NCBI GenBank assembly: GCA_002269645.1
Contig: NIVC01003594.1
Location: 1 to 64,000, forward strand
Source of the DNA: Macrostomum lignano
Taxonomy: Eukaryota
DNA: 64,000 nt
Direction of reading: 5' to 3'
Part shown: one piece after another, positions 3,965 through 50,702 of the stretch
How the letters are laid out: each line of letters starts with the position of its first letter
Numbering within the stretch: the first letter of the stretch is position 1
Position numbers and translations under genes: made by a program
The notes under the pieces: model-generated
Database searches by the model: none
Seen by the model: only the letters and a program-made list of their open reading frames with translations
What the model was told of the DNA's origin: nothing

Positions 3965-11268
<7,304 letters not shown>

Positions 11269-17620: not shown

Positions 17621-20233
17621 ATGGAGTCCGCGCTATCTTCAGTGAAGTCCAGCCTGCGCCCCGTCACCACCCGGGTGACCTCGCAGACCGGACTGGTGAC
17701 GCTTGAAAGGCGCGACGGCTGCTTGATGAACGAGGAGGCTGCCGAGGCTCAGGCGGAATCTGATAAAGAGTCCGTGTTCGCCAGACATGGATTTATTCCT
17801 CTGACTAAACCGGATCTGCAGGTGAGCACTTGTCTGCTTTTTCTCCCTCGTAGCTTTTCAACTCATTGGCAGAGGGTTCAATCGATATGTATCGAAAGCA
17901 TCGTATCGGTGCAGTTTTAGCCGATATGTATCGAAAGTATCGTATCTGTGCAGTTTTAGCCGATATGTATCGAAAATATCGTTTCGATTCAGTTTTAGCC
18001 GATATGTATCGAAAGTATCGTATCGGTGCAGTTTTAGCCGATATGTATCAGAAGTATCGTATCGGTGTAGTTTTAGCCGATAGGTATCGAAAGTATAGTG
18101 TTGGTGCAGTTTTAGCCGATATGTATCGAAAGTATCGTATCGGTGCAGTTTTAGCCGATATGTATCGAAAATATCGTATCAGTACAGTTTTAGCGATATG
18201 TATCGAAAGTATCATAATTGGTACAGGTTTAGCCTATATGTATCGAAAATCAAATTATACGTGTACTATGTGTCTGTTTTTTTATTCGTTCAAACTGCAG
18301 CAGAAGATCAGCAAGGCGAACAGAAGGGGTATCGGTCAGAAAAAACGCAACGGCCCCCAATTATGATTCGAGAATCGATAGGGGAAAATTTTGCCAGCTG
18401 CTCATTAATCTATAGTGGCTTCGCTAAAGCTCTTGCAAGCTCTTCTGTCTTTTTTGCCCGCCGCTTCTCAAAGCACAGCTGAGTCCGGCAGCCTACAGCA
18501 TATTTTTCTTCCTATTTTGTATAGCAGCTCCGCCTTGGGCGCTTGTTTTAGAATTCATCGTTTCGGCTTTGAATTTCTCTCACCAAAGGCGCAGCCATCC
18601 CGGTTTTAGCCAGGACGTTCTTTAGTGCATTTTCACTTCCACTGCGGGTCCTAGCTGAGTTTTTGTCAATATTTTTGTGCTGGGAAATAAAGCTTTCGAT
18701 GCTTAATTAACAATAGCGTGTAAGGATCTGTGTAATGGTTTCTAATCCCCGTTTGGGATGGGAATATTTTTGCTTATCAGTGGGTTGGGGAGGCGATCTG
18801 TTTGATTATCAGTGGGTTGGGGAGGCGATCTGTTTGATTATCAGTGGGTTGGGGAGGCGATCTGTGTGATTATCAGTGGTTGGGGAGGCGATCTGTGTGA
18901 TTATCAGTGGGTTGGGGAGGCGATCTGTGTGATTATCAGTCGGTTGGGGAGGCGATCTGTGTGATTATCAGTGGGTTGGGGAGGCGATCTGTTTGATTAT
19001 CAGTCGGTTGGGGAGGCGATCTGTTTGATTATCAGTGGGTTGGGGAGGCGATCTGTGTGATTATCAGTGGGTTGGGGAGGCGATCTGTGTGATTATCAGT
19101 GGGTTGGGGAGGCGATCTGTGTGATTATCAGTCGGTTGGGAAGGCGATCTGTTTGATTATCAGTGGGTTGGGGAGGCGATCTGTTTGATTATCAGTGGGT
19201 TGGGGAGGCGATCTGTTTGATTATCAGTCGGTTGGGGAGGCGATCTGTTTGATTATCAGTGGGTTGGGGAGGCGATCTGTGTGATTATCAGTGGGTTGGG
19301 GAGGCGATCTGTGTGATTATCAGTCGGTTGGGGAGGCGATCTGTTTGATTATCAGTCGGTTGGGGCTGCAATCTGTGTGATTATCAGTCGGTTGGGGAGG
19401 CGATCTGTGTGATTATCAGTCGGTTGGGGAGGCGATCTGTGTGATTATCAGTGGGTTGGGGAGGCGATCTGTGTGATTATCAGTCGGTTGGGGAGGCGAT
19501 CTGTGTGATTATCAGTCGGTTGGGGAGGCGATCTGTGTGATTATCAGTGGGTTGGGGAGGCAATCTGTTTGATTATCAGTGGGTTGGGGAGGCGATCTGT
19601 GTGATTATCAGAGGTTAGGCAGTTTCTCTACCTTTTCATAGGGGACGATTTGCCGAACAGGCAGTTGCTTTACATATAATCAAACGTACACAAGCTTCAT
19701 ACGCTCAAGTTTACTGCCAGTAGTCTATGTGAGACTTTACAAATGGGATAAAATCTAAGCGCAAATCCCCACTGCAGGTCGGCTGCGTCCTGCCGCACCT
19801 GCTTGTCGGCTCGCAAGACGCCGCGGCAGACGGGCCGACCCTTCACCGCTACTGCATCAGCCACGTGGTCAACCTGGCGCACCCCGCCGTGCGGCCGCGC
19901 CCGCCCCCGGAGATTCGCCTGGACGCCACCCTCCAACTGGCCGTCCTGGACACCGACCAGCAGCAGCTGCGTCCGCATCTGGCCGGGGTGGCCGACTTTA
20001 TCGACGCCTGCCGCGACTCCGGCGGTGTCTGTCTGCTGCACTGCAACGCCGGCGTGTCGCGGGCGCCGACATTTGCGGCGGCCTACTTGATCCTGCGCCG
20101 TGGCCTCGGCTTCGAGGCCGCTCTCGCCCAGGTCCGAGCCGCCAGGCCGGCCGCCCGGCCCAATGCCAACTTCCTGCGGCAGCTCCGGCTGCTGGCCGAG
20201 GAGATGGCGGCTGGCGGGCACGACACAGTCTAG
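17621..20233 (+). CDS. DUSP19: Atypical dual-specificity phosphatase, DUSP19-like, join(17621..17821,19778..20233), ~218 aa
   Basis: N-terminal LRPVTTRVTSQTG and PDLQ|VG..LLVGSQDAA motifs typical of DUSP19. General-acid Asp (VLD), intact HCNAGVSR P-loop and ARP...PNANFLRQL. Phase-0 intron CAG|gtgagc ... ctgcag|GTC. Confidence 0.88.
17882..18250. repeat. 39-bp minisatellite in the DUSP19 intron
   Basis: Unit GATATGTATCGAAAGTATCGTATCGGTGCAGTTTTAGCC. Confidence 0.93.
18775..19612. repeat. 32-bp G-rich minisatellite in the DUSP19 intron (TTATCAGTGGGTTGGGGAGGCGATCTGTGTGA)
   Basis: Direct periodicity. Confidence 0.97.
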
Positions 20234-21943: not shown

Positions 21944-24900
21944 ATGCTATCCGCTAAGCTGAGCCAGTCTGTCCGCCTCCTCTTGCCCAGGGCCGCAGCG
22001 GCCGCCGCCCGCCCGCTGTCCGGCGGCCCGGCTATTCCGGAGCCGATTCGCCAACCCGAAGTGAAATTCAACAAACTATTCATTAACAACGAATGGGTTG
22101 ATTCGGTGTCTGGTAAAACGTTTCCAACTATTAATCCGGCTACGGGCGAGGTCATCACCCAGGTGGCCGAGGGTGACAAAGCCGATATTGACAAGGCCGT
22201 TGATGCGGCTAATCAGGCCTTTCGCTATGGCTCTGAATGGCGCCGAATGGACGCTTCTCAGCGGGGCAACCTCATGAACAAGCTTGCCGATCTAATGGAG
22301 CGGGACAAAGTCTATCTTGCGGTTAGTTAACTAGAAAATATAGGCTTGGGCATAATAGTTTAACTAAAATCTACATGGTTTAGTTTTACCCCTTTCGTAA
22401 AATGAACTCTTGTATCATTTATTTGTTTCTTTGACCCAGCCACTTTGTCTAGCTGGCGTACATCTAATTCTAATGCCTGACTTATTGTGTTACAGTCGCT
22501 AGAATCCTTGGACAATGGCAAGCCGTATCTGTTCTCTTACCTGGCTGACGTTGAGCTCAGCATTCGTTGCTATCGGTGAGTTTATTGCATCGAGTTGCTG
22601 CATTAGCCAGCAGCAGCAGGGTTGAGCTGCACGTTTTCAACTATTTTGCTTTTCAAACTTCTATACCTTGCAGAGTGGGGTTTGGGGCATTATCCAATTC
22701 TCGTATTGGCTATTCTTAAAGCTTGTGTTTGCAAGCACTATAGCCCTTTAATTGCGCTGTTTCCAGTGGGCCATCGTGCATTATGCATGATTAAATAGTA
22801 TAGACAGAAGAATTGCCATGTATATATGCATTGCATAACAATATGTGTTTAAATTAAAATATTGAGTGAGAATTATCACAAATTAGCTGCGTGCCACATG
22901 CTCCATCATGTACGCCACCTATGCTTGGCGCCCTATCAACCATGCTTGACGCCTCTATCACCCATGCTTGGCGCCTCTATCACCCATGCTTGGCGCCTCT
23001 ATCACCCATGCTTGGCGCCTCTATCACCCATGCTTGGCGCCTCTATCACCTATGCATGGCGCCCTTATCACCCATGCTTGGCGCCTCTATCACCCATGCT
23101 TGGCGCCTCTATCACCCATGCTTGGCGCCTCTATCACCCATGCTTGGTGCCCTTATCACCTATGCTTGGCGCCTCTATCACCCATGCTTGGCGCCTCTAT
23201 CACCTATGCCTGACGCCCCTATCACCGATGCCTGGCGCCCCTGTACCTATGCTTGGCGCCTCTATCACCCATGCTTGGCGCCTCTATCACCTATGCCTGA
23301 CGCCCCTATCACCGATGCCTGGCGCCCCTGTACCTATGCTTGGCGCCTTTATCACCCATGCTTGGCGCCTCTATCACCTATGCCTGACGCCCCTACCACC
23401 GATGCCTGGCGCCCCTGTACCTATGCTTGGCGCATTTATCACCCATGCTTGGCGCCTCTATCACCTATGCCTGACGCCCCTATCACCTATGCTTGGCGTC
23501 CCGGTCCCTATCACCCATGCTTGGCGCCTCTATCACCTATGCTTGGCGCCTCTATCACCCATGCTTGGCGCCTCTATCACCTATGCCTGACGCCCCTATC
23601 ACCGATGCCTGGCGCCCCTGTACCTATGCTTGGCGCATTTATCACCCATGCTTGGCGCCTCTATCACCCATGCTTGGCGCCTCTATCACCTATGCATGGC
23701 GCCCTTATCACCTATGCTTGGCGTCCCGGTCCCTATCACCGATGCCTGGCGCCTTTATCACCCATGCTTGGTTGATCTATTGAATCGTTAGATTAACTTG
23801 TTGAGGGCTTCTGGGCCTTTTATTGGTCTTTTATTACCTTGGATAATAAATTTACCATCTCCATAGTTACTACGCCGGCTGGGCCAACAAGAACCACGGC
23901 AAGACCATCCCGGTTGACGGCAACGCGTTCTGCTTCACCCGACACGAGCCGGTCGGTGTCTGCGGCCAAATTATTCCGTGGAATTTTCCTCTACTGATGC
24001 AGGCCTGGAAGCTGGGCCCGGCGCTCAGCATGGGCAACACCGTTGTGATGAAGACGGCTGAGCAGACTCCCCTTACTGGGAATTATCTTGCCCAGCTGGC
24101 CAAGGAGGCCGGATTTCCACCCGGCGTGCTCAATATTGTGCCCGGCTATGGGCCCACCGCAGGCGCAGCTCTGGCGCTGCACAACAAAGTTGACAAGGTG
24201 AGCCGCTGTTCGATGTAGTGATCCAAGATTTCATTATAAATAAGGTTGGAAATTGCCTGTCACCCAGCAGTATGCCAACCAACTGAGGATAAGTGGATAA
24301 CCAAGAACTAAGGATAAGTGGATAACCAACTGAAGATAAGTGGATAACCAACTGAGGATAAGTGGATAACCAAGAACTAAGGATAAGTGGATAACCAACT
24401 GAAGATAAGTGGATAACCAACTGAGGATAAGTGGATAACCAACTGAGGATAAGTGGATAACCAACTGAAGATAAGTGGATAAACAACTGAGGATAAGTGG
24501 ATAACCAACTGAGGATAAGTGGATAACCAACTGAGGATAAGTGGATAACCAACTGAGGATAAGTGGATAACCAACTGAGGATAAGTGGATAACCAACTGA
24601 GGATAAGTGGATAACCAACTGAGGATAAGTGGATAACCAACTCAGGATAAGTGGATAACCAACTGGGGATAAATGGATAACCAACTGAGGATAAGTGGAT
24701 AACCAACTGAGGATAAGTGGATAACCAACTGAGGATAAGTGGATAACCAACTGAGGATAAGTGGATAACCAACTGAGGATAAGTGGATAACCAACTGAGG
24801 ATAAGTGGATAACCAACTGAGGATAAGTGGATAACCAACTGAGGATAAGTGGATAACCAACTGAGGATAAGTGGATAACCAACTGAGGATAAGTGGATAA

Positions 24901-26433
24901 CCAACTGAGGATAAGTGGATAACCAACTGAGGATAAGTGGATAACCAACTGAGGATAAGTGGATAACCAACTGAGGATAAGTGGATAACCAACTCAGGAT
25001 AAGTGGATAACCAACTGGGGATAAATGGATAACCAACTGAGGATAAGTGGATAACCAACTGAGGATAAGTGGATAACCAACTGGGGATAAATGGATAACC
25101 AACTGGGGATAAGTGGATAACCAACTGGGGATAAATGGATAACCAACTGGGGATAAGTGGATAACCAACTGGGGATAAGTGGATAACCAACTGAGGATAA
25201 GTGGATAACCAACTGAGGATAAGTGGATAACCAACTGGGGATAAGTGGATAACCAACTGGGGATAAGTGGATAACCAACTGGGGATAAATGGATAACCAA
25301 CTGAGGATATGTGGATAACCATCTGAGGATAACAATATCTAGGTTTACAAACCAAAAACATGCTTACTCCCTGAATAAAGGATAACAATAGGAGAAAGGT
25401 TGTTAAGCCAGCCATATCTTTTAATCCTTTCGTTAATCCTTTTGATTACCTGAACACAAGTGTCTCTTGAATGTAAAAATAGCCTGAAGTCACAAGCAGC
25501 AGGCGTGGCAAATCCATCAATTCCTAATTCGCTTCCCTCACCCTCCCCCCCCCCATCCAGCTGGCCTTCACCGGCAGCACGGAGGTCGGCCGCCTGATCC
25601 CGCAGTACGCCGGCCAAAGCAATCTGAAGCGCGTCAGCCTCGAGCTGGGCGGCAAGAGTCCCAATGTGATCTTCTCCGACGCTGATCTTGAGTACGCCGT
25701 TGAGAAGTCGCACTTTGCTCTATTCTTCAACCAGGGCCAGTGCTGCTGCGCCGGCAGTCGCACCTTTGTTGAGGAGTCCATCTACGACAAATTTGTCGAG
25801 ATGAGCGTCGAGCGGGCCAAGAAGCGTCTGGTTGGCGACCCTTTCAATCTCAACACGGAACAGGGACCGCAGATCGACCAGGAGCAGATGGGCAAAATTC
25901 TTGAGTTGATCAAGAGCGGCAAGAGCCAGGGTGCTAAGCTGCTCACTGGCGGTGCTCAGCACGGCGATAAGGGCTACTTTGTGCAGCCGACCATCTTCTC
26001 CGATGTCCAGGTTGGCTGATTTGAACTGCTTGACTATCTTGACTGGCTGACAGTAAAGGCAGCTTTGAATTTCCTAACCAAATTGCTATCCAAATCCCAG
26101 GACGAGATGCGCATCGCCCAGGAGGAGATTTTCGGCCCGGTCATGCAGATCATGAAGTTCAAATCTGTCGACGAGCTGATCGAACGCGGCAACAAGACCA
26201 TCTACGGTCTGGCAGCCGGCATCTTCACCAAAGACCTGGACAAGGCCATGCACGTCAGCCAGGGCCTGCGCGCTGGCACCATCTGGATCAACGAGTTCGA
26301 TCATTTCGACGCCGCCGCTCCATTCGGCGGTTTCAAGATGTCCGGCAACGGCCGAGAGCTGGGCGAGTACGGCCTGGAGGCCTACACCGAGATCAAGTGC
26401 GTCATGATACGCCTGGCCGAGAAAAATAGCTAA
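21944..26433 (+). CDS. ALDH2: Mitochondrial aldehyde dehydrogenase (ALDH2-like), join(21944..22321,22496..22575,23867..24197,25561..26010,26101..26433), ~523 aa
   Basis: Arg-rich, acid-free N-terminal presequence. Motifs [36 protein letters not shown] (catalytic Glu), [12 protein letters not shown] (catalytic Cys), EEIFGPV and [19 protein letters not shown]. All junctions are GT-AG and phase-consistent. Confidence 0.95.
22905..23770. repeat. ~22-bp minisatellite in ALDH2 intron 2 (CTTGGCGCCTCTATCACCCATG)
   Basis: Direct periodicity. Confidence 0.95.
24283..25330. repeat. 22-bp minisatellite in ALDH2 intron 3 (GATAAGTGGATAACCAACTGAG)
   Basis: Direct periodicity. Confidence 0.97.
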
Positions 26434-26868
26434 ATCTGTTAATGAACATGTTCGAGCTGCAGACATTAGAAACATTGAACTAGATATTAGATAAGTCAAA
26501 TGACTACTTTCGATTGGGCGTCTACTCGGAGTTTTTTGGCTAAATTTGTGCACCGAAGTACTGGTAATATATATAGACTAAGGCTAGGCCAATTTATCTG
26601 AGGACTAGACTGACTGTAGGATGCTATGTATAACTCCTGTGTCCTCCCTGTAAATTTCTATTGGCTGGCTCCTTTATCGATCGCTTACCCCCTCCTAGCT
26701 CAACCCCCCTCCGGCTGCGTCCGCCTTCCACGCGCAAACCAATAAACCCCATTCCTCCCTGCCCCGTTTATTCCCCTTGTCAAGCCATGTATGTACATTC
26801 TCAGTGGCGCTTGTGAATGTACATTATGACTGCACCCTGTAACAAGCTGCTTACGCTCTTCACGCGTG

Positions 26869-29032
26869 CCCGGTTAAAAAAAAGACGGTCGCCAAAATGG
26901 CTTGCGACTGTTCATTCCGCGACCGTTGGTCGACCGTATGTCGACCGTTCGTCGACCGTTGCCTGTCACGCGTCGACCGTTGATTTTCGACCGTCGTTTT
27001 CGTCGACCTTTGCGACTAACAATGCGACCGTTTGGGGACCTACTCCTGTGACCGTTCCTGCGACCGTCCATCGACCGTTCCCACGACCGTCCATCGACCA
27101 TTCCCGCGACCGTCCATCGACCGTTCCCACGACCGTCTATCGACCGTTCCCACGACCGTCTATCGACCGTTCCCGCGCCCGTTCCTGCGACCGTCCATCG
27201 ACCATTCCTGCGACCGTCCATCGATCATTCCTGCGACCGTCCATCGACCGTTCATCGACTGTTCCTGCGACCGTTCATCGACCGTACCTGCGACCGTTCA
27301 TCGACCGTTCCTGCGACCGTTCATCGACCGTCCATCGACTGTTCATCGACCGTTCCTGCGACCGTTCATCGACCGTTCCTGCGACCGTTCATCGACCGTT
27401 CCTGCGACCGTTCCTGCGACCGTTCCTGTGACCCGTCCTGCGACCGTTCGTCCTCCTTTCATCGACCGTTCAGCGACTGTTTGGATTGCTCCGGCGACCC
27501 TTCGTCGCCCTAGATCGTATTGTGTTCTAAAAGTCTAAAAATGAAAAAAAGCGTGTAAAGACGGAAACTTTCTTTCGCTACTAATTATTACTTTCGACAA
27601 ATTGAAGATTTAACGCGTCGAAAATGTAGGAAGCGTAGACAGTGTAGACATTCTTCCCTGTTTATTTTCTACTTTTTGTTATCAATAATACCAAAAAACA
27701 AAAACATTTGCGTATATAAACGAAGCGCATAAAGGAACAAATGCCAAAGGAGTGACAGAGAAGTGGCCAGACGGAGGGGAGAGATGAAATTGTAAGATGG
27801 GTATTTTAGGTTAATGCAGTGCTAAATGCTAAACGCCCAGGCGCATGTGTCTCGCATTTTCGGAAACTGCACGTTCAAATTCGTGTGAGCAAGTAATTAA
27901 TAGCTACATACTTCACGCTGCTCGCGAACATTTGTGACACTAATTATAACTACTGCTTTAACTGCTATAACTGCTACTGCTATAACTATAACTATTGCTG
28001 CTGCTATTTTACCCACCACGGCTGCTCCGTGTTGGGCAAGTAGCATAAATTTTTAAATATCGAGCTGGTGCTAGATTTAATGTAGGTGGAGTAAGGGAAA
28101 GAAAAAACTGGTGCTCACATTGCCCAAGTAGGAAATTGCCACGAGCAAGTGTTAGTTTAAGTAGTAAAAAAATAATTCATTTTTTCAATAACTTGCCACA
28201 CACTGAAGCTGCTGCACTTGTTGCCGTTTCGTTGTTGGTTTATTGTGCTGTTCTAGATGAATAAATACATTCGTCACATATATGGAATTCCATCATCTAT
28301 GGTAGTGTCACTGAAAGGTGTGGAATAATGGCCACATCGATTAATTATTGCTTCTGGCTAAAAGTATACATACAATGAGAGAACACAAGCGTCAGGTAAA
28401 ATGCACAGGTTCGTATAATGGAACAACAAATGTAATTAAGTAGTTGGGCTCCGTAGTAGGATGGGATAAAGCTAGGATAGGCGTGAAACCGTGGTGGGAA
28501 AAACGGTCGAAAGAGTGGTCGATAAAACGGTCGACGGACGGTCGACGAAACGGTCGACGGACGGTCGACAGAACAGTGGACAGAACGGTCGACAGATGGT
28601 CGCAGAGACGGTCGCCGAGATGGTCGACAAGACGGTCGACAGAACGGTCGGCAAGCCGGTCGGCAAAACGGTCGACAAAACGGTCGACAGACGGTCGACA
28701 GACGGTCGCAGAGACGGTCGCAGAGACGGTCGCAGACAAGGTCGCAGAGATGGTCGAAGTAACGGTCGCAGAGACGGTCGCAGAAGAACGGTCGCAAAAA
28801 CAGTCGACGGAACAGTCGCTACCAACGGTCGCATGCCACGGTCGCAAGAATTAGTCGCACAGTCGCACACATCGACCGTGCAGAATGGTCGACTACTCGG
28901 TCGTTCACATGGTCGCATCCGGCGACCGTGCTTAACGGGCGCTGGAATGGTCGCAATAATAGTCGACGCCGGCCATCACGGTCGCAGGACGGTCGAGGGC
29001 CCTGAAATGCGACCGTTATTTTTTTAACCGGG
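26869..29032. mobile_element. Non-autonomous TIR DNA transposon (2164 bp): CCCGGTTAAAAAAA...TTTTTTTAACCGGG ends, 3-bp TSD GTG, long subterminal CGACCGTT arrays in opposite orientation in the two arms
   Basis: GTG at 26866-26868 and 29033-29035. Arms ~26900-27510 (CGACCGT) and ~28490-29020 (ACGGTCG), with an AT-rich non-coding centre. No transposase ORF. Superfamily uncertain (CACTA/EnSpm-like architecture). Confidence 0.82.
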
Positions 29033-29747
29033 GTGGCTTTAAAATTTAGAAAGTCATGCGCGTTCATATGCCCAAAAGAAAGTAGTCTAAGTGTACTTTT
29101 ATTAATTTGAGTTTCTGAGTGGTACAGCTAGTAGTGTTTCTAATTACTATGCTTCGACCAAAACAAAAGATTGTGTCGCTTTAATAAAACAAAAACTATT
29201 TATGAGTATAATCTCATAATTCTTGCCTTCTGTATTAAATTTTTACTATAAAACCATACTCATTGGGAGGATTTTTTACAATGAAGTAACTTGTTTTGGG
29301 ACTCAAATATTTAATTTTATGTTTTTTATGATTCATTTTCTCATTCAAAATTCAAAGGTTTTGTGTTCCGGTGTTTTGTTATTACAGTGGCTGCTCACTC
29401 AAATGTACTGAACTGTCTGCTGACTTTTCTCCACATTAATATTGGCTGGTGTAATCTCACGTGTTCAAATAAAAAGTTTTATTGTCCTATTGGTTGATTT
29501 AAACTGTCATTAAATATGAGTTTCGTCTTTAAAGCTTTCTTGCTTTTTGATAGAGTGAATTAAGTACTTTGAAGGCAGGTAGGTAACCCTGTGCTCAGGC
29601 TTAGGGTGGACAAAATATAATTTAGTCATTATCTATATGACTGTTAGCATTGATGATAATATGAAGTGACAGCATCCTTCGCTATAGTAGTTGCTGGGCC
29701 ACGGTCCTCCCAGATTGCCAGGGCTAGATTACCATCACCCTCGCAGA

Positions 29748-30478
29748 TCTTCAGTTGCTGGGCCAGCCTCCCAGATCCTCAGTTGCTGGGCCAGTCTCCC
29801 AGATCCTCAGTTGCTGAGCCAGCCTCCCAGATCCTCAGTTGCCATCCTCCCAGATCCTCAGTTGCCAGCCTCCCAGATCCTCAGTTGCTGAGCCAGCCTC
29901 CCAGATCCTCAGTTGCTGAGCCAGCCTCCCAGATCCTCAGTTGCTGAGCCAGCCTCCCAGATCCTCAGTTGCTGAGCCAGCCTCCCAGATCCTCAGTTGC
30001 TGAGCCAGCCTCCCAGATCCTCAGTTGCTGAGCCAGCCTCCCAGATCCTCAGTTGCTGAGCCAGACTCCCAGATCCTCAATTGCTGAGCCAGCCTCCCAG
30101 ATCCTCAGTTGCCATCCTCCCAGATCCTCAGTTGCCACCCTCCCAGATGCTCAGTTGCTGAGCCAGCCTCTCAGATCCTCAGTTGCTGAGCCAGCCTCTC
30201 AGATCCTCAGTTGCTGAGCCAGCCTCCCAGATCCTCAGTTGCCATCCTCCCAGATCCTCAGTTGCCACCCTCCCAGATCCTCAGTTGCTGAGCCAGCCTT
30301 CCAGATCCTCAGTTGCTGAGCCAGCCTCTCAGATCCTCAGTTGCTGAGCCAGCCTCCCAGATCCTCAGTTGCTGAGCCAGCCTCTCAGATCCTCAGTTGC
30401 TGAGCCAGCCTTCCAGATCCTCAGTTGCTAGGCCAGCCTCCCAGATCCTCAGTTGCCATCCTCCAGATCCTCATTTGC
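29748..30478. repeat. 28-bp minisatellite (CCTCCCAGATCCTCAGTTGCTGAGCCAG) upstream of the first RINT1 coding exon
   Basis: Direct periodicity. Confidence 0.96.
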
Positions 30479-30583
30479 TGGGCCACCACCGCCCTCCCGA
30501 TCATCAGTAGTGAGATTTTGGCGCCAGTTAAAATTGAAGATCAGCTCAAACAAAACAAAAATTGGTGCTCTTTGTGTCCCCAG

Positions 30584-33500
30584 TCGCAGTCGCTAACCGC
30601 CCCGATCCCGGCCGCTCTGGCTGCCGAGCTGGCCAAGCAGCTGAACGATCGGCTGCCCACCGTGGAGGCGGTCCGCGAGCTCGCGCCCGGCCTGCTGCGC
30701 GAATCCGCAGAACGGCTGGACCTGCTGCGCAAGCAGGCCCGTCTGCACGACTGCACGCGCTACGGACAGGCCAGGCTGGCCTGCCGGCAGCTGCAGGCCG
30801 AAGTTGCCGAACTGCTGCAGCTGCACGCACAGCTCGCCGACCGCTGCCAGCGTCAGCTGGACAACTGCCGACCGCTGCTGGTCGACGGCGGCCTAGCGGA
30901 GCGGGCGGCCGAGCTGGACTTGGCCGAGGCGCGGCTGGAGGCGATGAAGCTTCGAGAACAGCTGGAGTGCCAGGTGAGCTGGCAGAATTGTGTCCGGTTG
31001 CTCCTGTGCTAGATGCATCTAGTTGATATAGTGTCCTAGATGTGTCCGGTTGATTGTGTCCTAGATGTGTCCGGTTGATTGTGTCCTAGATAGATGTGTC
31101 CGGTTGATTGTGTCCTAGATAGATGTTTCCGCTTGATTGTGTCCTAGATAGATAGATGTGTCGGGTTGATTGTGTCCTAGATAGATAGATGTGACCGGTT
31201 GATTGTGTCCTAGATAGATAGATAGATGTGTCGGGTTGATTGTGTCCTAGATAGATAGATAGATGTGACCGGTTGATTGTGTCCTAGATAGATAGATGTG
31301 TCCGGTTGATTGTGTCCTAGATAGATGTGTCCGGTTAATTGTGTCCTAGATAGAGAGATGTGTCCGGTTGATTGTGTGCTAGATAGATCGATAGATGTGT
31401 TCGGTTGATTGTGTCCTAGATAGATGTTTCCGCTTGATTGTGTCCTAGATAGATAGATAGATGTGTCGGGTTGATTGTGTCCTAGATAGATAGATGTGTC
31501 CGGTTGATTGTGTCCTAGATAGATCGATGTGTCCAAAGCTGTCAGGAGCCAAACCCAGTGACCCTCCGCCCGCAGGCGAGCGCGGTGCAGGCCGCCCTAG
31601 TCACTGGCAGCTTCGACCGGGCCGCCGAGCAGTTCCGCCGGCTGGCCCTGATGCGCCGCGATCTCCGGCCGCCGGATCGCCTGCCCGAAGCCGAAGCTGC
31701 CGAGCTCCGCTCGGACGCCGAGGCCAGCCTGGACCACTGGGCCAACCAGCTGCGCCGGAAGTTTAGCGCCGAATTCGCCGCTGCCGTGCGCGCCATTGGC
31801 TGGCCGTTTAACAGCGGCGGCTCGACCGGTGGCGGTTCCGCCGACACCTCCACTCCGGTATCCGCTTCCGGTTCCGCTTCGTCCGGCACTTCCGGTAGCA
31901 GCGGCGGCAAAGAGAGAGACTTTGTGGTGAGCTTTCGCCGATTCGCCCAGCTGCAAGTTCCTGCCGAGGCTTCCGGCCGGTCGCTACCGCCTCTGGAGGT
32001 GATGCTGGAGCCGTTCCGAAAGAAATTCGCCTTCCACTTCTCTGGAGATCGGCCGACTAACGATCCGGCCAGGCCGGAGATCTTCCTCACGCAGGTGCGA
32101 TTATTAGCAGGTGGTTTTAGATTGGATAGGAGCATGGCGGAACCCACGAAAGGAGCCGAGAGGAGGGTAGCGGAGTCCACCAAAGGACCCGAGAGGAGGG
32201 CAGCGGAGCCCACCAAAGGACCCGAGAGGAGGGTAGCGGAGCCCACCAAAGGACCGATATTCCTTTGCGGCGTTTCCAACATCCGGCATCAGAAGTAGAG
32301 AGAATTAGTGGCGTCCACCAACTTTTAAAGTAAAAATGAAGATTTTATATAGGGTGGTAATTGTCTGTCGCATAGTTTTAAACCCCGCAATCACTGTTAA
32401 CTACCGCCAGGTGCTGAAATGGATCAAAGAGCACGACGCCTTCCTAGGCCAGGTGGTGCAGCCCTGCCTTGATCAGGTTGGCATGTCCGCTTGGGACGTG
32501 CGCGAAGAATTCGCATCCGGCCTGATGGAGCTGGTCAAACGGAAGCTGGGCCAGTTGTTGGAGCAGTACAGGTAGAAGTTCGCTCTGGCTCTATTTTGGG
32601 GCTTGTGCACGAATAATTGTCGTGTGGGTTGTCCTACAATTCACACCTATGAGGCCCGACCCCTAAGCACAGGGTGTTTCTGACAATTATAAAATAGGGC
32701 GATGTCCAGGGAAATCGTATAATGATGCTAAGCAATGATTCGCTAAATTTTCCAGAGAGCTGCCCGACAAAGAGGAGGCTGACCTCCGCTTGGCGCACCT
32801 CATCAACGAGCTGCTGGCGCTGGACCGGGAGCTGGCCGCAGTCGGTCTGCCCTCGGCCGCTGCCACCGTCGGCAGCGTGCTTGGCGAGCCGCGCTGGCTG
32901 GCCTGGTGGGAGGGCCTGGAGGCCAAGTTTGCCCAGGCCCGCCTGGACGAGATCCTGCTGGCTGGCGACGCCTGGAGCCCCGCTGGCGGCGTTGAAGACT
33001 CGTCCTCGTCCTCGTCGGCGGCGGTGCCGCAGTGCGCGGAGGCGGTGATGGCGCTGGTGCAGGCGCTGGGCGGGCGGGCCAACCTGCTGCGCACCGACCT
33101 GCACAAGCGGGCCCGGCTGTTCCGCGTGCAGCTGGACGTGCTGGAGGACTTCCGGGTTCGACTGCGGCAGGTGAGCAGCGCCCGGAGTGACTGGCTGTGC
33201 CCGGAGTGACTGGCTGTGCCGGAGTGACTGGCTGTGCCGGAGTGACTGGCTGTGCCCGGAGTGACTGGCTGTGCCCGGAGTGACTGGCTGTGCCCGGAGT
33301 GACTGGCTGTGCTGGAGTGACTTGCCGTGCCGGAGTAACTGGCTGTGCCGGAGTGACTGGCTGTGCCGATCAGGCTTTATGACCTATTGCGCCTTTACTA
33401 TGAGTAATTGTGCCGATGGTGCCATTGTATGGCCAATTGTGCTATTTTATGACTGATATGTGTAATTATATGATCAAAAGTGCTTTTCCGACCGGCTGTG

Positions 33501-34840
33501 TGCTCCATTTTTGTGTTTAATATCTGATATTTTTACCTAAAAACACACGGTCTGGCTTCACTCACTCCCGCGACCTCAGGTGACCCGCCGCTACCCGACC
33601 TCCGATCCGCGCTGGTTCGGCGCCCTGAACAGCCTGCAGTTTGCCCGGGACTCCCTCACGGACTGGGCCGATCAGCTCGATTACGCCGAGCTGTCCCGGC
33701 TGCCCGAGTCTGAGCGGAGCATCCACGGAGCTGCCGCCGCCGCCTCCGGCACCGCTGGTGATGAAGCTGCCAGGTGAATTTGTTGCACAAATGGTCAGCT
33801 AGGATTCAATGGTGTCTCTTGGCGTCTATGGGGGTCTCTAGGGATCTAGAGGTGTATATAGAGATCTAAGGGTGTCTCTAGGGATCTAAAGATGTATATA
33901 GATATCTAAGGGTGTCTCTAGAGATCTAGGGGTGTCTCTAGGGATCTGCAATCATTCAGAGTCTATCAAAGACACCCTTTGCAATGATTTGCAATCATTT
34001 TCCCTAGCAGAGCGCCGGCCGCCGCAGCCGCAGGCCTGGCCGATCTGTCCAGCGCCGCCATCGCTGACGACGACGACTCCTCCGGGGCGGGCGTTTTCGC
34101 CCCGGTTGCTAGGCGCCTTGCCGCCACCCAATCCGAACTGCTCGAGTCCCTAGTGCGCGGCATCCTTGACCAGCTGGCCGCCTTGTTGGAGAGCCTTGGA
34201 CCGGACACTTTCCTGTCTGGTCGGCCGAGCGACGCACCGGCTTTGGCCGCCCTGTTCCTGGCCGTCAGAGACTCGCTGCAGGCCTGCCGTGATCGCCTGC
34301 AGCCGGCCGTGTTCCGGCCCGTGTGGCGCCGTCTGGCTGCCGGGCTCAACCGGCTGCTCATGCGACAGCTGCTGGGCATGCGGTTCAGCCACGCCGGTGG
34401 CCTGCAGTTCGCGCACACAGTGACCAAGGTGAGCCGTCGAGCGTTCGGGCACTGCTCGAGCACCCTAGAGTTTCACATCCCTATAGAGTTTCACATCCCT
34501 ATAGAGGTTCACATCCCTATAGAGTTTCACATCCCTATAGAGTTTCACATCCTGATAAACCTGATAAATCGAACCCAACATCAAACCCATGCAGGTATTC
34601 ATGCCGGTGTTCGCCCAGTACTGCGGCCGGCCGGACCGTCTGCTAGCCGAGAGCGCCCAGGCCTGCTGCCTGCTCGGCTTGGCGCGGGGCACCGCGGCGC
34701 TGCTGCGCCAGGCGCTGGCCGGACCGCCGCGCGATGGCGAAGATCCGCTAAGAATGCTGCTGGATCTGGGCGTGTCGTCGCTGACGCCCGAGGAGGCGCT
34801 GGCCGTGCTGAAGCGCCGGATTGACTTGGACCAGGCGTGA
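30584..34840 (+). CDS. RINT1: RAD50-interacting protein 1 / TIP20 (NRZ tethering complex), join(30584..30973,31576..32094,32411..32571,32756..33170,33580..33773,34011..34428,34595..34840), ~780 aa; initiator codon not found in the first exon
   Basis: LPPLEVMLEPFRKKFAFHFSGDRPTN..RPEIFLTQ|VLKWI, HLINELLALDREL, CAEAVMALV, LEDFRVRLRQ|V, LNSLQF..LTDWAD, FSHAGGLQF and YCGRP match RINT1/TIP20 motifs. Six GT-AG introns with consistent phases (0,0,2,0,2,0). Confidence 0.9.
31030..31535. repeat. GATTGTGTCCTAGATAGATGTGTCCGGTT minisatellite with variable GATA units, RINT1 intron
   Basis: Direct inspection. Confidence 0.93.
33181..33370. repeat. 18-19-bp GGAGTGACTGGCTGTGCC minisatellite, RINT1 intron 4
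   Basis: Direct inspection; same unit at 35192-35720. Confidence 0.92.
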
Positions 34841-35187
34841 CCTGCCTGTGAAGATGCTGCAGGTTCTTATATACTACTCATATAGCTACTCATCATTTAG
34901 ACATGCTGGTTTAGGTTCGCCGTTTATCGATTTCATAAATAAACTGCTGCTGCTTCGCATCGGGTTATTCAGAGATCTGTTTTCTTACTGCAAGCAAAAC
35001 ATTTTCACACCCTAGAGTTTCACATCCTATAGTCCGATGCTCTATGAACTTGCATGTAAAAAATTATAGCAAGAGCACACAATCTGACTCGCGGTAAATT
35101 GAAATTGACTTTTTTAATGGAATTGGAATCCGAGCAACATGTACTCTATCACAATCTATATGTACATGTATATCTCGAAATGGTTTA

Positions 35188-35968
<781 letters not shown>

Positions 35969-36533: not shown

Positions 36534-38840
36534 CTAAAAATGAGTTGTCGGTAGGTATGCGATAGATTTCAGAAAAAACGGCTCAACCGATTTTCTTCAA
36601 ACTTGCACCATTCGATCAGAAATTTTCCTGGGACGGTACATACATCTTGGCTAAGAAATTGCTCAATTCTAAAGGGATTAAATATTCGAAAAACATGCTT
36701 TTTTGCAAAGGTCAAACAGAATTTTCGACTTGAAATGCATTGTAAAAATGCTAGAGAAAAAACTGACTGACTGAATTCCTATTCTGATAAAGATTGCATC
36801 ACAACAAGTTGAAAACAGTGCCAAAGAAATGCGCACAAGAATTGATTTAAATTGCGTAACCATATTGCTAACTTGAATTGAGACTGATACTGGCTGACTG
36901 AGAAATTGATTATGTCATAACTTTTTACTCTTACTGACTTGCTGTAAGAATTGAAGTATAAGGGCCACAATTCATGTTCTCCAATTGAAAAGAGATAGCC
37001 AAGATGCGAACAATGTAGCGACCTGGGTTCGAATCTTAGTAGTGCAAAATGATTTTTTAAAAACTTAAAAAGACAAAATGCTAAACATAAAAGAAGCGAA
37101 ATGTCAAACATAAAAGTGGCACCATGTCAAATATAAAAGAGCTACCGTACCATGTCAGATATAAAAGAGCCACCATGTCAGACATAAAAGAACCACCATA
37201 TCAAACATAAAAGAGCCACCATGTCAAACATAAAAGAGCCACCATGTCAAACATAAAAGAGCTACCATGTCAAACATTAAAGTGCTACCATGTCAAACAT
37301 AGAAGAGCCACCATGACCAACATTAAAGAGCTACTATGTCAAACATAGAAGAGCCACCATGTCAAAGATTAACGAGCTATCATGTCAAACACAAAAGAGC
37401 CACTATGTCAAACAAAGAAGAGACACCATATCAAACATAGAAGAGCCACCATGTCAAACATTAAAGTGCTACCATGTCAAACATAGACGTGACTCCGTGT
37501 CAAACATTAAAGAGCCAACATTTCAAACATACACGTGACTCCATGTCAAACATTAAAGAGCCACCATGTCAAACATAGAAGAGACACCATATCAAGCATA
37601 GAAGAGCCACCATGTCAAACATAAAAGAGACACCATATCAAGCATAAAAGAGCCACCATGTCAAACATTAAAGAACCATTTCAAACATAAAAGAGACACC
37701 GTTTCAAACATAAAAAGAAGTGTCATGCCAAACAAAATGGAGCCACTATGAAGCTAAGGAAATTGCTGCACTAGCTATTTGTTCTCTGGTGGATGCTTGC
37801 TATTTAAGGATGGATACTTGCTATCAGGGGGATGCTTGCTATCAGGGGGATGCTTGCTATCTGAGGGATGCTTGCTATCTGAGGGATACTTGCTATCAGG
37901 GGGATGCTTGCTATCAGGGGGATGCTTGCTATCTGAGGGATGCTTGCTATCTGAGGGATGCTTGCTATTGGGGGGATGCTTGCTATTGGAAGGATGCTTG
38001 CTACTGGGGTAACTTGCTATTGGGAGATGCTTGCTCTTAGGGGTGGAGGGTACTTGCTATCTGAGAGGGGGTTGATAGATATCTATAAGGTCTCTTTGTA
38101 TCCAGGTTATGCTTGCTGTCTAGGGTTGCTTGTGGTCTGGGGGATACTTGCTATCTAGGAGATGCTTGCTATCTGGGGGATGCTTGCTATCTAGGGGATG
38201 CTTGCTATCTGGGGGATGCTTGCTATCTGGGGGATGCTTGCTATCTGGGGGATGCTTGCTATCTGGGGGATGCTTGCTATCTGGGGTTGCTTGCTATATG
38301 GGGGGGGATGCTTGCTATCTAGCTGGGGGATGCTTGCTATCTGGGGGATGCTTGCTATCTGGGGGATGCTTGCTATCTGGGGGATGCTTGCTATCTGGGG
38401 GATGCTTGCTATCTGGGGGATGCTTGCTATCTGGGGGATGCTTGCTATCTGGGGGATGCTTGCTATCTGGGGGATGCTTGCTATCTGGGGGATGCTTGCT
38501 ATCTGGGGGATGCTTGCTATCTGGGGGATGCTTGCTATCTGGGGGATGCTTGCTATCTGGGGGATGCTTGCTATCTGGGGGATGCTTGCTATCTGGGGGA
38601 TGCTTGCTATCTGGGGTTGCTTGCTATATGGGGGGGATGCTTGCAGTCTGGGGGATGCTTGCTATTTGGGGATTGATGTTTGAATGCTGTCTGGGGATGC
38701 TTGCTGTCTTGGGATGTTAATTGTTTTTAGAGGCAATGTCTGTTGTTTTTTATGAAGGCTTTATTTCGCTGTCTATTTGTTATTTGTAAAGAACAAAGAT
38801 TCTATCCAGATGTCCCCCATCGGGGGGCGAAGATTGCTAG
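36534..38840 (+). mobile_element. Non-autonomous Helitron copy 1 (5' end damaged), carrying a 22-bp array (37095-37730) and an 18-19-bp GGGGGATGCTTGCTATCT array (37795-38715)
   Basis: Core shared with 44142ff (AAACGGCTCAACCGATTTTC...AAATATTCGAAAAACATGC). 3' hairpin CCCCC-ATCG-GGGGG followed by AGATTGCTAG|T. Confidence 0.78.
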
Positions 38841-48568: not shown

Positions 48569-50702
48569 AAGGTTGACAGATATTTTTAGATTTCCAAGGC
48601 TTATTGGGGGCATTGCTGAGATGTCAAGGGGGGAAGTTGATATGTTAAAGCTGGGGGGGGGGAATTACTGACATGTCAAGGCTTACAAGGTTTGACAGGA
48701 GATTTTTTAAGATTTCAAGGATACATGTAGCTTATTAAAAAAACGTGTAAAGCATTTCTTTGGCTCCCCAACGGGGGCGTAGATTGCTAGTAATGTCTCC
48801 TAATATCAGTCATCCTCTCACAGTGCTTATACAGCTTTTTTCCTCAGCTTGCTTTTTCCTTTAGCTGCTAGAATTAATGTAATAGCCTACTTGACCTCTT
48901 AATGGTTTGCAAAATTCTTCTTTGAAAAGTTAGCCTTTAGACATTTGAATAGAAATCCATTGCACAAGTTGAAGTCTAGGCTATAGGGACCTTGCCTAGT
49001 CCCTAGATTTAATCAAAAGATCTAAAATAGCCTTATAAATGAGCAACTAGGCCTACACATTGTTTATCTATCATAAAATCTCATTCAATTGAATTAGATT
49101 TTATTAAAGAGTACATTAAAAGTCCCTAGTATGCTAGCTAAAATTTGATACTAAAGTACTAACTATTGACCTTAGTGTTTAATAAAGTTATGGAGATAGA
49201 GACTTGGATATTCTCTAGCCATAAATAGCACAATTTAGTCGAAATTGGCCTGGAATCTTTAGCTCTTAGCCAATAGTGATAGTCTCTTTTGTCATCTGAC
49301 TCATCTAGGACTAGGTATAACCAGGTTTTATCCTTAACAACAATAACAAAAACCTAAATAGCAATTTAGGATATTATCCAAGCTCATTGCTATTGAACAT
49401 CTTCTAGATCTGCTTGGTGCAAGTGTCTTGTTGAAATTCTTTGTGATTTTTGTTAGTTACCATATTGGAATAACTGCTTGTATGATGTACAACCATCTGT
49501 CACACAAAGTTGTTAAATTTTTGGTGCCATACTGCATAACTGCAAAATTAGTTATATTTATATATAACATTCATTATGTCAAAGCATAATGTTTATAAAC
49601 CTATACCATATATCTGCAGGATCTGAAATTGTATTTCAATAGGTATTACTTACATATTACTAGTTATTAGTTACATGGTGCAGCAAGGCAAAAAGTCCTT
49701 AAAAAGGCTTAAAAGCACAAAGTGATCTTCCTATTTCTTTATGGTGTCATTGGCTTTGTCATAGTGTAGCTTGTATAGGCATCTGGTGCACTTAAGCCAT
49801 AAACTTCAATAAAGGTAGAAATTTCTAGAATTACAATACAATGCATGCTACTACAGCAGCAGCCTCACATCCAGCAGGCCTCCGAGCAGCTCCAGACACT
49901 GGCTAGACCCCATCGGGGCTGGCCGCCAGTGCTGGACTGTCAGGCGTGGGGTGGAAGGTCCGTTGGCCACGGACACGAAAGCTGGAATTCCGGCCCCTCT
50001 GCTGGGGTTGACCCTGGTGGACCTGGTGGCAGGCTCACCGACATGCCCTCTGCACACTCACGCGGCGACGCGGTGGTGCAAGGCCCCTGTCCTATGGTGA
50101 GCGGGGCATTGACGGCTGGCTGTGCCATGTTGCAGTCAGACCGTTCCCGTAGGCCCATTGACCAGGTGACCCAGCGGGGCCGGCATCAACAACAACAACA
50201 ACTACAGCAGCAGTCCCTTTACCAAAGATAAAGTCCAAATAAGAAGAGAACTTTCACAAAATCCAAATGAATGATTAATGATTAATAAATGGTTTATTAA
50301 TATTGGTACATACAGTCAGTCAGCCAGCCAGTCAGACTGCTCTAAGCAAAGGAGGGGTTCACTGGCTTTGAAGCCTTATCCCTGATTGAGCAGCACCTTG
50401 CCATTGCCACTGTCTTGCTCTCTCTATATAACAAATAAATTGTGCTTCTTCTCCTTGCCTTCTTAACTTAGACTTGCCCAGTATATGTGAGCTGCCAAAC
50501 TGGTGAATGCAATGTGATCCAAACATACAACCTTTGTCATGCAGCCACCAAAAGATTCAATTTTAGTTTTGTCATCAATTTTTCCATTGACCAATGTTTT
50601 TGTTTTAATCTGGCTCGTTAATGTCTGAAATTGAAATTTAATTATGTTGATTAGATTCACAAATGTAGAAAGTTCTATTTTTCACCTTGCAGATTGCTAA
50701 AA

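What the first reader, a model, noticed from the sequence alone, without database searches (positions are those of the whole stretch)
30541..30620. RINT1 has no genomic start codon at its first exon: candidate for an initiator AUG supplied by a trans-spliced leader
Seen: the RINT1-homologous frame begins right after a good acceptor (ctttgtgtccccag|TCG CAG TCG CTA, 30584), and the first in-frame ATG is ~120 codons later, inside the conserved helical region. The best upstream donor (CAG|gtaggt, 29579) has an in-frame TGA at 29570-29572, so it cannot supply a Met. Known: flatworm spliced leaders end in AUG, and in Schistosoma this AUG can initiate translation. Inference: SL-AUG joined in phase 0 gives a natural-looking MSQSLTAPIP N-terminus and a ~781-aa protein, close to normal RINT1 length, so an essential trafficking gene would depend on trans-splicing. 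Depends on the untested flatworm assignment.
Basis: partly seen in the sequence, partly recalled or inferred. Interest (0 to 1): 0.75.

Follow-up and report, generated by a model that had tools for sequence, protein, structure and literature searches.

The report
RINT1 start codon supplied by spliced leader
In this piece of the flatworm Macrostomum lignano genome the trafficking gene RINT1 has no start codon of its own at its first exon and almost certainly takes its AUG from the trans-spliced leader, a mechanism already known in flatworms, so this is a clean but ordinary example.

Summary
The window is positions 1-64000 of M. lignano contig NIVC01003594.1 (assembly Mlig_3_7). A seven-exon RINT1 gene of 780 codons, with a full-length Pfam RINT1_TIP1 match (1.8e-59), begins at 30584, right after ...ctttgtgtccccag. 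The frame has no ATG back to a TGA at 30401. The only ATG in exon 1, in any frame, is codon 121 (30944).

The 35-nt M. lignano spliced leader ends in ATG, and joining it at 30584 or 30590 gives an in-frame MSQSLT... or MSLT... protein.

The strongest indirect support is the GenBank model of a homeolog (PAA86945.1, "partial", 780 aa). It starts with SQSLTAPIP on the first base after the same acceptor, and that annotation sets 5' gene ends from leader-containing reads. The acceptor and exon 1 are conserved without indels in all three genomic copies. Variation there is biased to third codon positions. Every candidate upstream ATG exon is broken in at least one copy.

No RNA or protein data could be examined, so leader addition and use of its AUG at this locus remain inferred (confidence about 0.75). 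The mechanism was described in flatworms in 2006. This is a new member of a known kind, of low to moderate interest.

The parts
30563..30583 (+). Polypyrimidine tract plus AG (ggtgctctttgtgtccccag): proposed spliced-leader trans-splice acceptor of RINT1
   Evidence: Identical in all three genomic copies, apart from 2 substitutions in the last 25 nt. The sequence further upstream is 28% substituted or gapped. The homeolog's GenBank CDS starts on the next base.
30584..30589 (+). TCGCAG: first two codons after the acceptor. Its AG (30588-30589) is a second possible acceptor giving an exon start at 30590, also in frame.
   Evidence: leader joined at 30584 gives MSQSLTAPIP..., joined at 30590 gives MSLTAPIP.... 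Conserved in all copies.
30584..30973 (+). RINT1 exon 1 (130 codons, phase 0 at both ends), with no genomic start codon at its 5' end
   Evidence: No indels among the three copies. 17 of 390 sites vary, split 5:1:11 by codon position (p=0.008). G+C by codon position is 0.85/0.46/0.87, similar to the rest of the CDS.
30692..30694 (+). Codon 37, CTG (Leu) in this copy. It is ATG (Met) in the two other genomic copies.
30944..30946 (+). First genomic in-frame ATG (codon 121). It is the only ATG in exon 1 in any frame.
30401..30403 (+). In-frame TGA that closes the frame upstream of the acceptor. There is no ATG between it and 30584.
31576..32094 (+). RINT1 exon 2
   Evidence: cag|GCG ... CAG|gtgcga.
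32411..32571 (+). RINT1 exon 3
32756..33170 (+). RINT1 exon 4
33580..33773 (+). RINT1 exon 5. The GenBank fragment model for this contig, PAA50634.1, starts at 33565.
34011..34428 (+). RINT1 exon 6 (tandem tag|cag acceptor)
34595..34840 (+). RINT1 exon 7 with stop TGA at 34838-34840. AATAAA follows at 34938-34943.
29736..30456 (+). Array of a 28-nt tandem repeat (about 26 copies) in the presumed outron just upstream of the acceptor. It is present with different copy numbers in the homeologs.
29034..29735 (+). Unique AT-rich spacer, either outron or possible promoter.
   Evidence: no ATG-bearing candidate exon is intact in all three copies.
26832..29033 (.). 2.2-kb foldback or MITE-like element inserted only in this copy, between Aldedh and RINT1
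21944..26433 (+). Upstream same-strand aldehyde dehydrogenase gene (possible operon partner). The CDS ends with TAA at 26431-26433.

Best explanation
This is the RINT1 (RAD50 interactor 1 / TIP20 family) gene of Macrostomum lignano. Its first coding exon begins at a spliced-leader trans-splice acceptor. The proposed mechanism has four steps.

1. A pre-mRNA is made, either from a promoter in the spacer or as a continuation of the upstream aldehyde dehydrogenase transcript. It carries an outron that includes the 28-nt repeat array.
2. The spliceosome joins the 35-nt leader of the SL RNA, which ends ...UUGCAUG, to the acceptor at 30583|30584. A join at 30589|30590 is a possible alternative.
3. 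The leader's terminal AUG is the only AUG in the leader and the first on the mature mRNA. It falls in phase 0 with TCG CAG TCG ....
4. Translation from that AUG yields a 781-aa (or 779-aa) protein, MSQSLTAPIP..., with an N-terminal helical region and the C-terminal RINT1/TIP20 domain.

Shown here: the organism, the gene model, the lack of a genomic ATG, the in-frame join, the conservation pattern, and the homeolog's 5'-partial CDS flush with the acceptor. Inferred: that the leader is added at this locus, and that its AUG is the initiator.
For: Organism and leader:
- The window is identical to M. lignano contig NIVC01003594.1.
- The M. lignano leader ends in ATG and is found on 30-39% of genes (PMC8629364; PMC5730564).

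Gene model and start codon:
- The gene has 780 codons, canonical GT-AG introns, and a full-length Pfam RINT1_TIP1 match.
- There is no in-frame ATG from the TGA at 30401 to codon 121, and no other ATG in exon 1.
- Leader plus exon 1 reads MSQSLT... in frame.

Database models:
- GenBank PAA86945.1 (Mlig004382g1, 'partial', 780 aa) starts SQSLTAPIP at L001:10001, the first base after gtgtccccag.
- In that annotation, transcriptional units were cut at peaks of leader-containing reads and ORFs were called by TransDecoder.
- None of the six database models of this gene family has an upstream Met exon.

Conservation among the three copies:
- The acceptor and exon 1 have no indels, and 4.4% of sites vary with a 5:1:11 codon-position bias.
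- At -26 to -144, 28% of columns are changed or gapped.
- Over the whole CDS, window against L002 shows 27 synonymous and 10 non-synonymous codon differences.

Upstream alternatives:
- Candidate upstream ATG exons are not conserved, or lie in a copy-specific transposon.

Precedent:
- In Schistosoma mansoni the leader AUG is in frame in 28% of trans-spliced mRNAs, and more than 40 cDNAs need it (Cheng et al. 2006, as summarised in PMC9851317).
Against: - No RNA-seq, RACE, ribosome-profiling or proteomic data could be examined, so leader addition at 30584 in this copy is not directly shown.
- GenBank annotates only exons 5-7 at this locus.
- The acceptor hexamers CCCCAG and TCGCAG match the published trans-splice motif [T/C]TNCAG only in NCAG.
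- Two homeologs carry an in-frame ATG at codon 37 that could act as a start.
- A good cis donor (CAG|gtaggt, 29579) lies about 1 kb upstream, and flatworm acceptors are often shared between cis- and trans-splicing (PMC12582326).
- A 5'-partial CDS next to an AG is not proof on its own. The neighbouring Aldedh model is also 5'-partial, starting 1 nt after an AG, and the leader AUG would be out of frame there.
- The exon 1 peptide has no detectable homologues outside M. lignano.
Confidence: 0.75

Rival explanations
1. The acceptor at 30584 is used mainly in cis. A non-coding first exon in the AT-rich spacer, for example one ending at CAG|gtaggt (29578/29579), would be spliced to it. The first 120 codons (36 in the homeologs) would then be 5' UTR, and translation would start at the first genomic AUG: codon 121 here, codon 37 in the other copies.
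For: The donor at 29579 is strong and retains GT in all three copies. Its in-frame TGA would make the upstream exon non-coding. The homeologs have ATG at codon 37. Flatworm acceptors are often shared by cis- and trans-splicing (PMC12582326).
Against: The homeolog's GenBank CDS is 5'-partial and begins exactly at the acceptor. A transcript with an upstream exon carrying an in-frame stop would have been given a Met start instead. Codons 1-120 show coding-type G+C periodicity, third-position-biased variation and no indels. Starting at codon 121 would remove most of the N-terminal helical region. In other RINT1/Tip20 proteins that region binds ZW10/Dsl1 (recalled from the literature, not tested here).
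Confidence: 0.12
2. An unrecognised upstream coding exon with a genomic ATG is cis-spliced in phase 0 to 30584, so the protein has a short extra N-terminus.
For: A scan of 26434-30560 finds 71 ATG...|GT combinations in the right phase. They include MIHFLIQNSK|gttttg (29328-29357), MSFVFKAFLLFDR|gtgaat (29516-29554) and MT|gttagc (29637-29642).
Against: None is intact in all three copies. The ATG at 29516 is AAG in L001 and L002. The exon at 29319/29328 is frameshifted and has lost its donor in L002. The GT at 29643 is AT in L002. The best-scoring donors (28396, 27893, 28432) lie inside the 2.2-kb element found only in this copy. No database model has such an exon.
Confidence: 0.05
3. The window copy is a redundant, decaying duplicate. 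It has lost the codon-37 ATG, and a transposon has landed in its upstream spacer. On this view the lack of a start codon is a defect rather than a mechanism.
For: This copy alone has CTG at codon 37 and the 2.2-kb insertion upstream. GenBank annotates only its 3' part. M. lignano DV1 carries extensive duplications (PMC8629364).
Against: All 780 codons are open, and all six introns keep GT-AG. Synonymous changes outnumber non-synonymous ones 27 to 10 against L002. The lack of an ATG at the exon start is shared by all three copies, so it predates their divergence.
Confidence: 0.05

Closest known systems
Flatworm mRNAs initiated at the 3'-terminal AUG of the spliced leader (Cheng, Cohen, Ndegwa and Davis 2006, J Biol Chem 281:733; called 'slORFs' in PMC9851317)
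   Same: The leader ends in AUG. It joins in phase with a long conserved ORF that has no genomic start codon at its 5' end. The leader's AUG is the first AUG on the mRNA.
   Different: That work was done on Schistosoma mansoni cDNAs with translation assays. Here the species is the free-living M. lignano, the gene is RINT1, and no transcript or translation data were examined. I found no paper that quantifies leader-AUG use in M. lignano.
SL trans-spliced genes and operons of M. lignano (Wudarski et al. 2017, PMC5730564; Ustyantsev and Berezikov 2021, PMC8629364)
   Same: Same organism and same 35-nt leader. [quoted passage not shown] Conserved housekeeping genes are reported to be over-represented among trans-spliced genes.
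   Different: The acceptor fits the published [T/C]TNCAG motif only partly. The repeat-adjusted distance to Aldedh (about 0.9-1.2 kb) straddles the authors' 1-kb operon threshold. Those papers do not discuss the leader AUG as an initiator.
RINT1 / Tip20 / MAG2 family (Pfam PF04437), a subunit of the NRZ/Dsl1 ER tethering complex
   Same: Full-length RINT1_TIP1 domain at the C-terminus (aa 269-774), preceded by a helical N-terminal region. Total length is about 780 aa.
   Different: The N-terminal 130 aa have no detectable sequence relatives outside M. lignano. The linker regions are low-complexity and rich in Ala, Ser and Gly. The gene is present in three near-identical genomic copies.

Membership tests
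mRNAs that use the flatworm spliced-leader AUG as initiator | The organism has a spliced leader ending in AUG | tested here: met
   The window is M. lignano contig NIVC01003594.1. The leader CGGTCTCTTACTGCGAAGACTCAATTTATTGCATG is given in PMC8629364 and PMC5173321. No SL RNA gene lies in the window itself.
mRNAs that use the flatworm spliced-leader AUG as initiator | [quoted passage not shown] | not testable with these tools
   The only evidence is indirect. The homeolog's GenBank CDS is 5'-partial and flush with the same acceptor, in an annotation built from leader-read peaks. A junction-sequence scan of metagenome contigs found nothing, and no Logan or other transcript-derived proteins exist for this gene.
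mRNAs that use the flatworm spliced-leader AUG as initiator | The leader AUG is in frame with the main conserved ORF, with no intervening stop | tested here: met
   Both possible acceptors (30584 and 30590) are in frame.
mRNAs that use the flatworm spliced-leader AUG as initiator | No genomic in-frame AUG at or upstream of the conserved N-terminal coding sequence | tested here: met
   There is no ATG from the TGA at 30401 to codon 121. The homeologs have one at codon 37, and the 36 codons before it are conserved.
mRNAs that use the flatworm spliced-leader AUG as initiator | Translation actually starts at the leader AUG | not testable with these tools
   This needs ribosome profiling, N-terminal proteomics or a reporter assay.
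RINT1/TIP20 family | RINT1_TIP1 domain (PF04437) above the gathering score | tested here: met
   202.5 bits against a cut-off of 30, E = 1.8e-59, profile positions 2-514 of 514, aa 269-774.
RINT1/TIP20 family | N-terminal region homologous to the ZW10/Dsl1-binding N-terminus of other members | tested here: inconclusive
   An HMMER search of 1.84 billion representatives with the exon 1 peptide found only M. lignano plus two spurious coiled-coil-type hits. There were no PDB relatives by sequence.
M. lignano operon (polycistronic unit resolved by trans-splicing) | Same-strand upstream gene within 1 kb after subtracting repeats (criterion of PMC8629364) | tested here: inconclusive
   The Aldedh stop is at 26433 and the acceptor at 30584, 4150 bp apart. 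Subtracting the 2202-bp element and the 720-bp array leaves about 1.2 kb from the stop codon, or about 0.9 kb from the AATAAA near 26743. In L001 the distance is 1710 bp including about 480 bp of array.

The most novel reading that the evidence does not exclude
All three homeologous RINT1 copies of M. lignano depend on the spliced leader for their initiator codon. This copy has also lost the only nearby fallback AUG (codon 37, ATG to CTG). Output of full-length RINT1 from this locus would then be strictly gated by trans-splicing. If many conserved housekeeping genes share this layout, the leader AUG would be a general, obligatory layer of translational control in a free-living flatworm, not an occasional convenience.
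Probability: 0.3. Interest if true: 0.4.

Novelty: new member of a known kind. Interest (0 to 1): 0.25.

Why it matters
There are two practical consequences.

**Annotation.** Genes of this type defeat standard gene finders. All six database models of this gene family are affected: five lack a start codon, including two models that begin 19 codons in, and one uses an internal Met at residue 155. At this locus exons 1-4 are not annotated at all.

**Experimental design.** Transgenes, knock-ins or expression constructs for such genes in M. lignano must either keep the acceptor or supply an ATG.

Biologically this adds a conserved, probably essential ER-Golgi trafficking gene to the set of flatworm genes that need the leader's AUG. 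The arrangement is shared by all three copies, so it predates their divergence. It does not open a new question, because the mechanism has been known since 2006.

Tried and rejected
- **Direct transcript evidence.** A scan of metagenome contigs for the leader-exon junction found nothing. The protein collection holds only six database members for this gene and none derived from transcript assemblies.
- **Orthologues for an N-terminal comparison.** The full-length search returned only the M. lignano cluster. A search with the domain region returned nothing, not even the self-match, so that result is uninformative. The exon 1 peptide searched against 1.84 billion representatives found only M. lignano. 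There were no PDB relatives by sequence.
- **Literature.** No paper mentions these gene identifiers or RINT1 in Macrostomum. The supplements of three M. lignano papers held nothing on them.
- **Other scans.** Rfam, tRNA and leader-sequence scans of the window were empty. The bacterial-type promoter/terminator scan is not applicable to this genome.
- **Rejected readings.** An upstream coding ATG exon was rejected because no candidate is conserved. A pseudogene was rejected because the ORF is intact and under purifying selection. An assembly artefact was rejected because three independent contigs share the same layout.
Full report
**1. What is in the sequence**

The stretch 30560-30600 reads aattggtgctctttgtgtccccag|TCGCAGTCGCTAACC. 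Translation from 30584 is open for 130 codons, SQSLTAPIPAALAAELAKQLNDRL...EAMKLREQLECQ, up to a consensus donor CAG|gtgagc at 30973/30974. Extended upstream, the same frame is closed by a TGA at 30401-30403 and contains no ATG. The only ATG in exon 1, in any frame, is at 30944, which is codon 121.

I built the whole gene from seven exons: 30584-30973, 31576-32094, 32411-32571, 32756-33170, 33580-33773, 34011-34428 and 34595-34840. All introns are GT-AG. The model has 780 codons plus TGA, with 69% G+C overall and 83% G+C at third positions. The product matches Pfam RINT1_TIP1 end to end, profile positions 2-514 of 514 and aa 269-774, at E = 1.8e-59.

**2. Which organism, and does its leader end in AUG**

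The protein is 99% identical to UniRef and GenBank entries of Macrostomum lignano. Window bases 23565-44840 are identical to NIVC01003594.1:23565-44840 of assembly GCA_002269645.1 (Mlig_3_7). The window is therefore positions 1-64000 of that contig.

M. lignano has one 35-nt spliced leader, CGGTCTCTTACTGCGAAGACTCAATTTATTGCATG, carried by an estimated 30-39% of its genes (PMC8629364; PMC5730564; PMC5173321). A later paper on the genus states that the terminal ATG is a translation start codon (PMC10468722). The leader holds no other ATG. Joined at 30584 it gives ATG TCG CAG ... = MSQSLTAPIP.... Joined at the second AG (exon start 30590) it gives MSLTAPIP.... Both are in frame. No SL RNA gene lies in the window.

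**3. Indirect transcript evidence from the database**

The 90% cluster of this protein has six members.

- PAA86945.1 (BOX15_Mlig004382g1) is flagged 'partial', is 780 aa long and begins SQSLTAPIP. On its contig (NIVC01000257.1, locus L001) the CDS starts at the first base after ...ctttgtgtccccag.
- The look-up tool reports CDS ranges, not gene ranges. I checked this on L002, where position 10001 is the ATG of the MRRDL... model.
- The Mlig_3_7 annotation was built by trimming the leader from reads, mapping them, cutting transcriptional units at the resulting peaks (the TBONE pipeline) and calling ORFs with TransDecoder (PMC5730564).

A 5'-partial ORF that starts in phase on the first base after an AG is what that pipeline yields for an mRNA whose start codon was in the trimmed leader. 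If the transcript had an upstream exon with the in-frame TGA, it would have been given a Met start instead.

The other models are instructive failures. Two WormBase/UniRef models start at LNDRL, an internal AG 19 codons in, with no Met. One GenBank model starts at an internal Met (residue 155). For this very contig GenBank annotates only a 290-aa fragment covering exons 5-7 (PAA50634.1, CDS 33565-34840) and nothing for exons 1-4.

One caution applies. The neighbouring Aldedh model is also 5'-partial and starts one base after an AG. There the leader AUG would be out of frame, and a genomic ATG lies 16 codons upstream. The annotation pattern is therefore supportive but not proof.

**4. Comparison of the three genomic copies**

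Two homeologous loci were fetched: L001 (NIVC01000257.1) and L002 (NIVC01000390.1).

| Region | Columns | Substituted | Gapped |
|---|---|---|---|
| Exon 1 | 390 | 17 | 0 |
| Last 25 nt before the acceptor | 25 | 2 | 0 |
| -26 to -144 | 121 | 22 | 12 |

- The upstream gaps include a 2-nt and a 1-nt indel that would break any reading frame.
- The 17 variable exon 1 sites split 5:1:11 by codon position. The binomial p for at least 11 of 17 at position 3 is 0.008.
- G+C by codon position in the first 120 codons is 0.85/0.46/0.87, against 0.73/0.51/0.82 in the rest of the CDS.
- Over the whole CDS, window against L002 shows 27 synonymous and 10 non-synonymous codon differences, and all copies are intact.

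The sequence is therefore constrained as coding from the first base after the acceptor, in the frame that the leader AUG would open. The layout is shared by all three copies and so predates their divergence. One difference stands out. L001 and L002 have ATG at codon 37 (APGM), whereas the window has CTG (30692-30694). This copy therefore has no genomic AUG before codon 121.

**5. Upstream alternatives**

I scanned 26434-30560 for every ATG that runs without a stop, in phase 0, into a GT. This gave 71 candidates.

- The donors that look best (28396 CAG|gtaaaa, 27893, 28432) lie in a 2.2-kb insertion (26832-29033) that is absent from both homeologs. The insertion has inverted ends and long subterminal inverted arrays of CGACCGT units, so it is a foldback or MITE-like element.
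- In the shared spacer:
  - the ATG at 29516 is AAG in both homeologs;
  - the exon at 29319/29328 is frameshifted and has lost its donor in L002;
  - the GT after ATGACT (29643) is AT in L002.
- The strong donor at 29579 is kept in all copies, but it is preceded by an in-frame TGA. It could only provide a non-coding first exon.

That last scenario, a cis-spliced 5' UTR exon with initiation at codon 121 or 37, is the main rival. I give it about 0.12. It conflicts with the homeolog's 5'-partial CDS and with the coding signature of codons 1-120. Minor cis-spliced isoforms cannot be excluded, because flatworm acceptors are often shared between cis- and trans-splicing (PMC12582326).

**6. Context**

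DSPc phosphatase, aldehyde dehydrogenase and RINT1 lie on the same strand in all copies. The Aldedh stop (26433) is 4150 bp from the acceptor. After subtracting the copy-specific element and the 28-nt repeat array (29736-30456), about 0.9-1.2 kb remain. That sits right at the 1-kb repeat-adjusted threshold used to call operons in this species (PMC8629364). Whether RINT1 is the downstream gene of an operon or has its own promoter in the AT-rich spacer is undecided. Either way the region upstream of 30584 would be removed as an outron.

**7. Comparison with what is known**

Use of the flatworm leader's 3'-terminal AUG as the initiator Met was shown for Schistosoma mansoni by Cheng et al. (2006). 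In that study the AUG was in frame in 28% of trans-spliced mRNAs and more than 40 cDNAs needed it. I cite this as summarised in PMC9851317 and PMC12582326. The present case meets every feature of that class that sequence alone can test: a leader ending in AUG, an in-frame join, no genomic start, and a conserved ORF from the acceptor onward. Two features need RNA or protein data and remain untested: leader addition at this site, and initiation at the leader AUG.

I found no paper that quantifies leader-AUG dependence in M. lignano or mentions RINT1 there. The gene is therefore a new member of a known kind.

**8. What did not work**

Attempts to find transcripts with the junction, orthologues for an N-terminal comparison, or supplementary tables naming the gene all failed. 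The domain-only protein search returned nothing at all, not even the self-match, so I treat it as uninformative.

**9. Verdict**

Confidence in the mechanism is about 0.75, pending leader-read mapping or 5' RACE. Interest is low to moderate. The case is a tidy illustration of a mechanism known for two decades. Its practical value is for annotation, since exons 1-4 of this locus are unannotated and all six database models of the gene family are either 5'-truncated or start at an internal Met. It also matters for transgene design in M. lignano.

Noticed in passing
window 26832-29033: A 2.2-kb insertion is present only in this copy of the Aldedh-RINT1 spacer. Its ends are inverted (CCGGTTAAAAAAAAGACGGTCGC ... 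GCGACCGTTATTTTTTTAACCGG) and it carries long subterminal inverted arrays of ~11-12-nt CGACCGT units. This looks like a foldback or MITE-like DNA transposon with no obvious transposase ORF.
   Followed up: partly
window 21944-21995 (and L001:4109-4160): The aldehyde dehydrogenase gene has a genomic ATG at 21944 that encodes a mitochondrial-presequence-like [16 protein letters not shown]. The GenBank CDS of the homeolog is 5'-partial and starts 16 codons later, one base after ...ttgcccag. A leader joined there would put its AUG out of frame. This may be an internal trans-splice site or an annotation artefact.
   Followed up: partly
window 30584-33564: RINT1 exons 1-4 are not annotated in GenBank for this contig. 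Only a 290-aa fragment (PAA50634.1, CDS 33565-34840) is called, probably because the tandem repeats in introns 1 and 4 broke the transcript assembly.
   Followed up: yes
window 34005-34011: There is a tandem tag|cag acceptor at RINT1 exon 6. The homeolog protein PAA84081.1 carries the extra Ser expected from use of the upstream AG, so both acceptors appear in database models.
   Followed up: partly
window 32411-33773 vs L001:11960-14457: RINT1 exons 3-5 are 100% identical between this copy and L001, while exon 1 is 96.9% identical. In exon 1, L001 is closer to L002 than to the window. This mosaic identity suggests gene conversion between homeologous copies.
   Followed up: no
window 50655-52493, 55778-57655, 61251-63185 (+ strand): Three tandem paralogues encode RING-finger (C3HC4) proteins of about 600 aa, each with its own genomic ATG. 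The middle one is split into two ORFs, by either an intron or a frameshift.
   Followed up: partly
window 19733-20230 (+ strand): An exon encodes a dual-specificity phosphatase domain (DSPc, 4.9e-23). With Aldedh and RINT1 it makes three co-oriented genes separated by repeat-rich spacers, which could be one polycistronic unit.
   Followed up: partly
window 29736-30456, 30989-31534, 33180-33367, 35192-35714, 37083-38671: The gene's outron, introns and 3' flank contain dense arrays of short tandem repeats (units of 18-33 nt). The 18-nt unit CGGAGTGACTGGCTGTGC occurs both in intron 4 and downstream of the gene.
   Followed up: no
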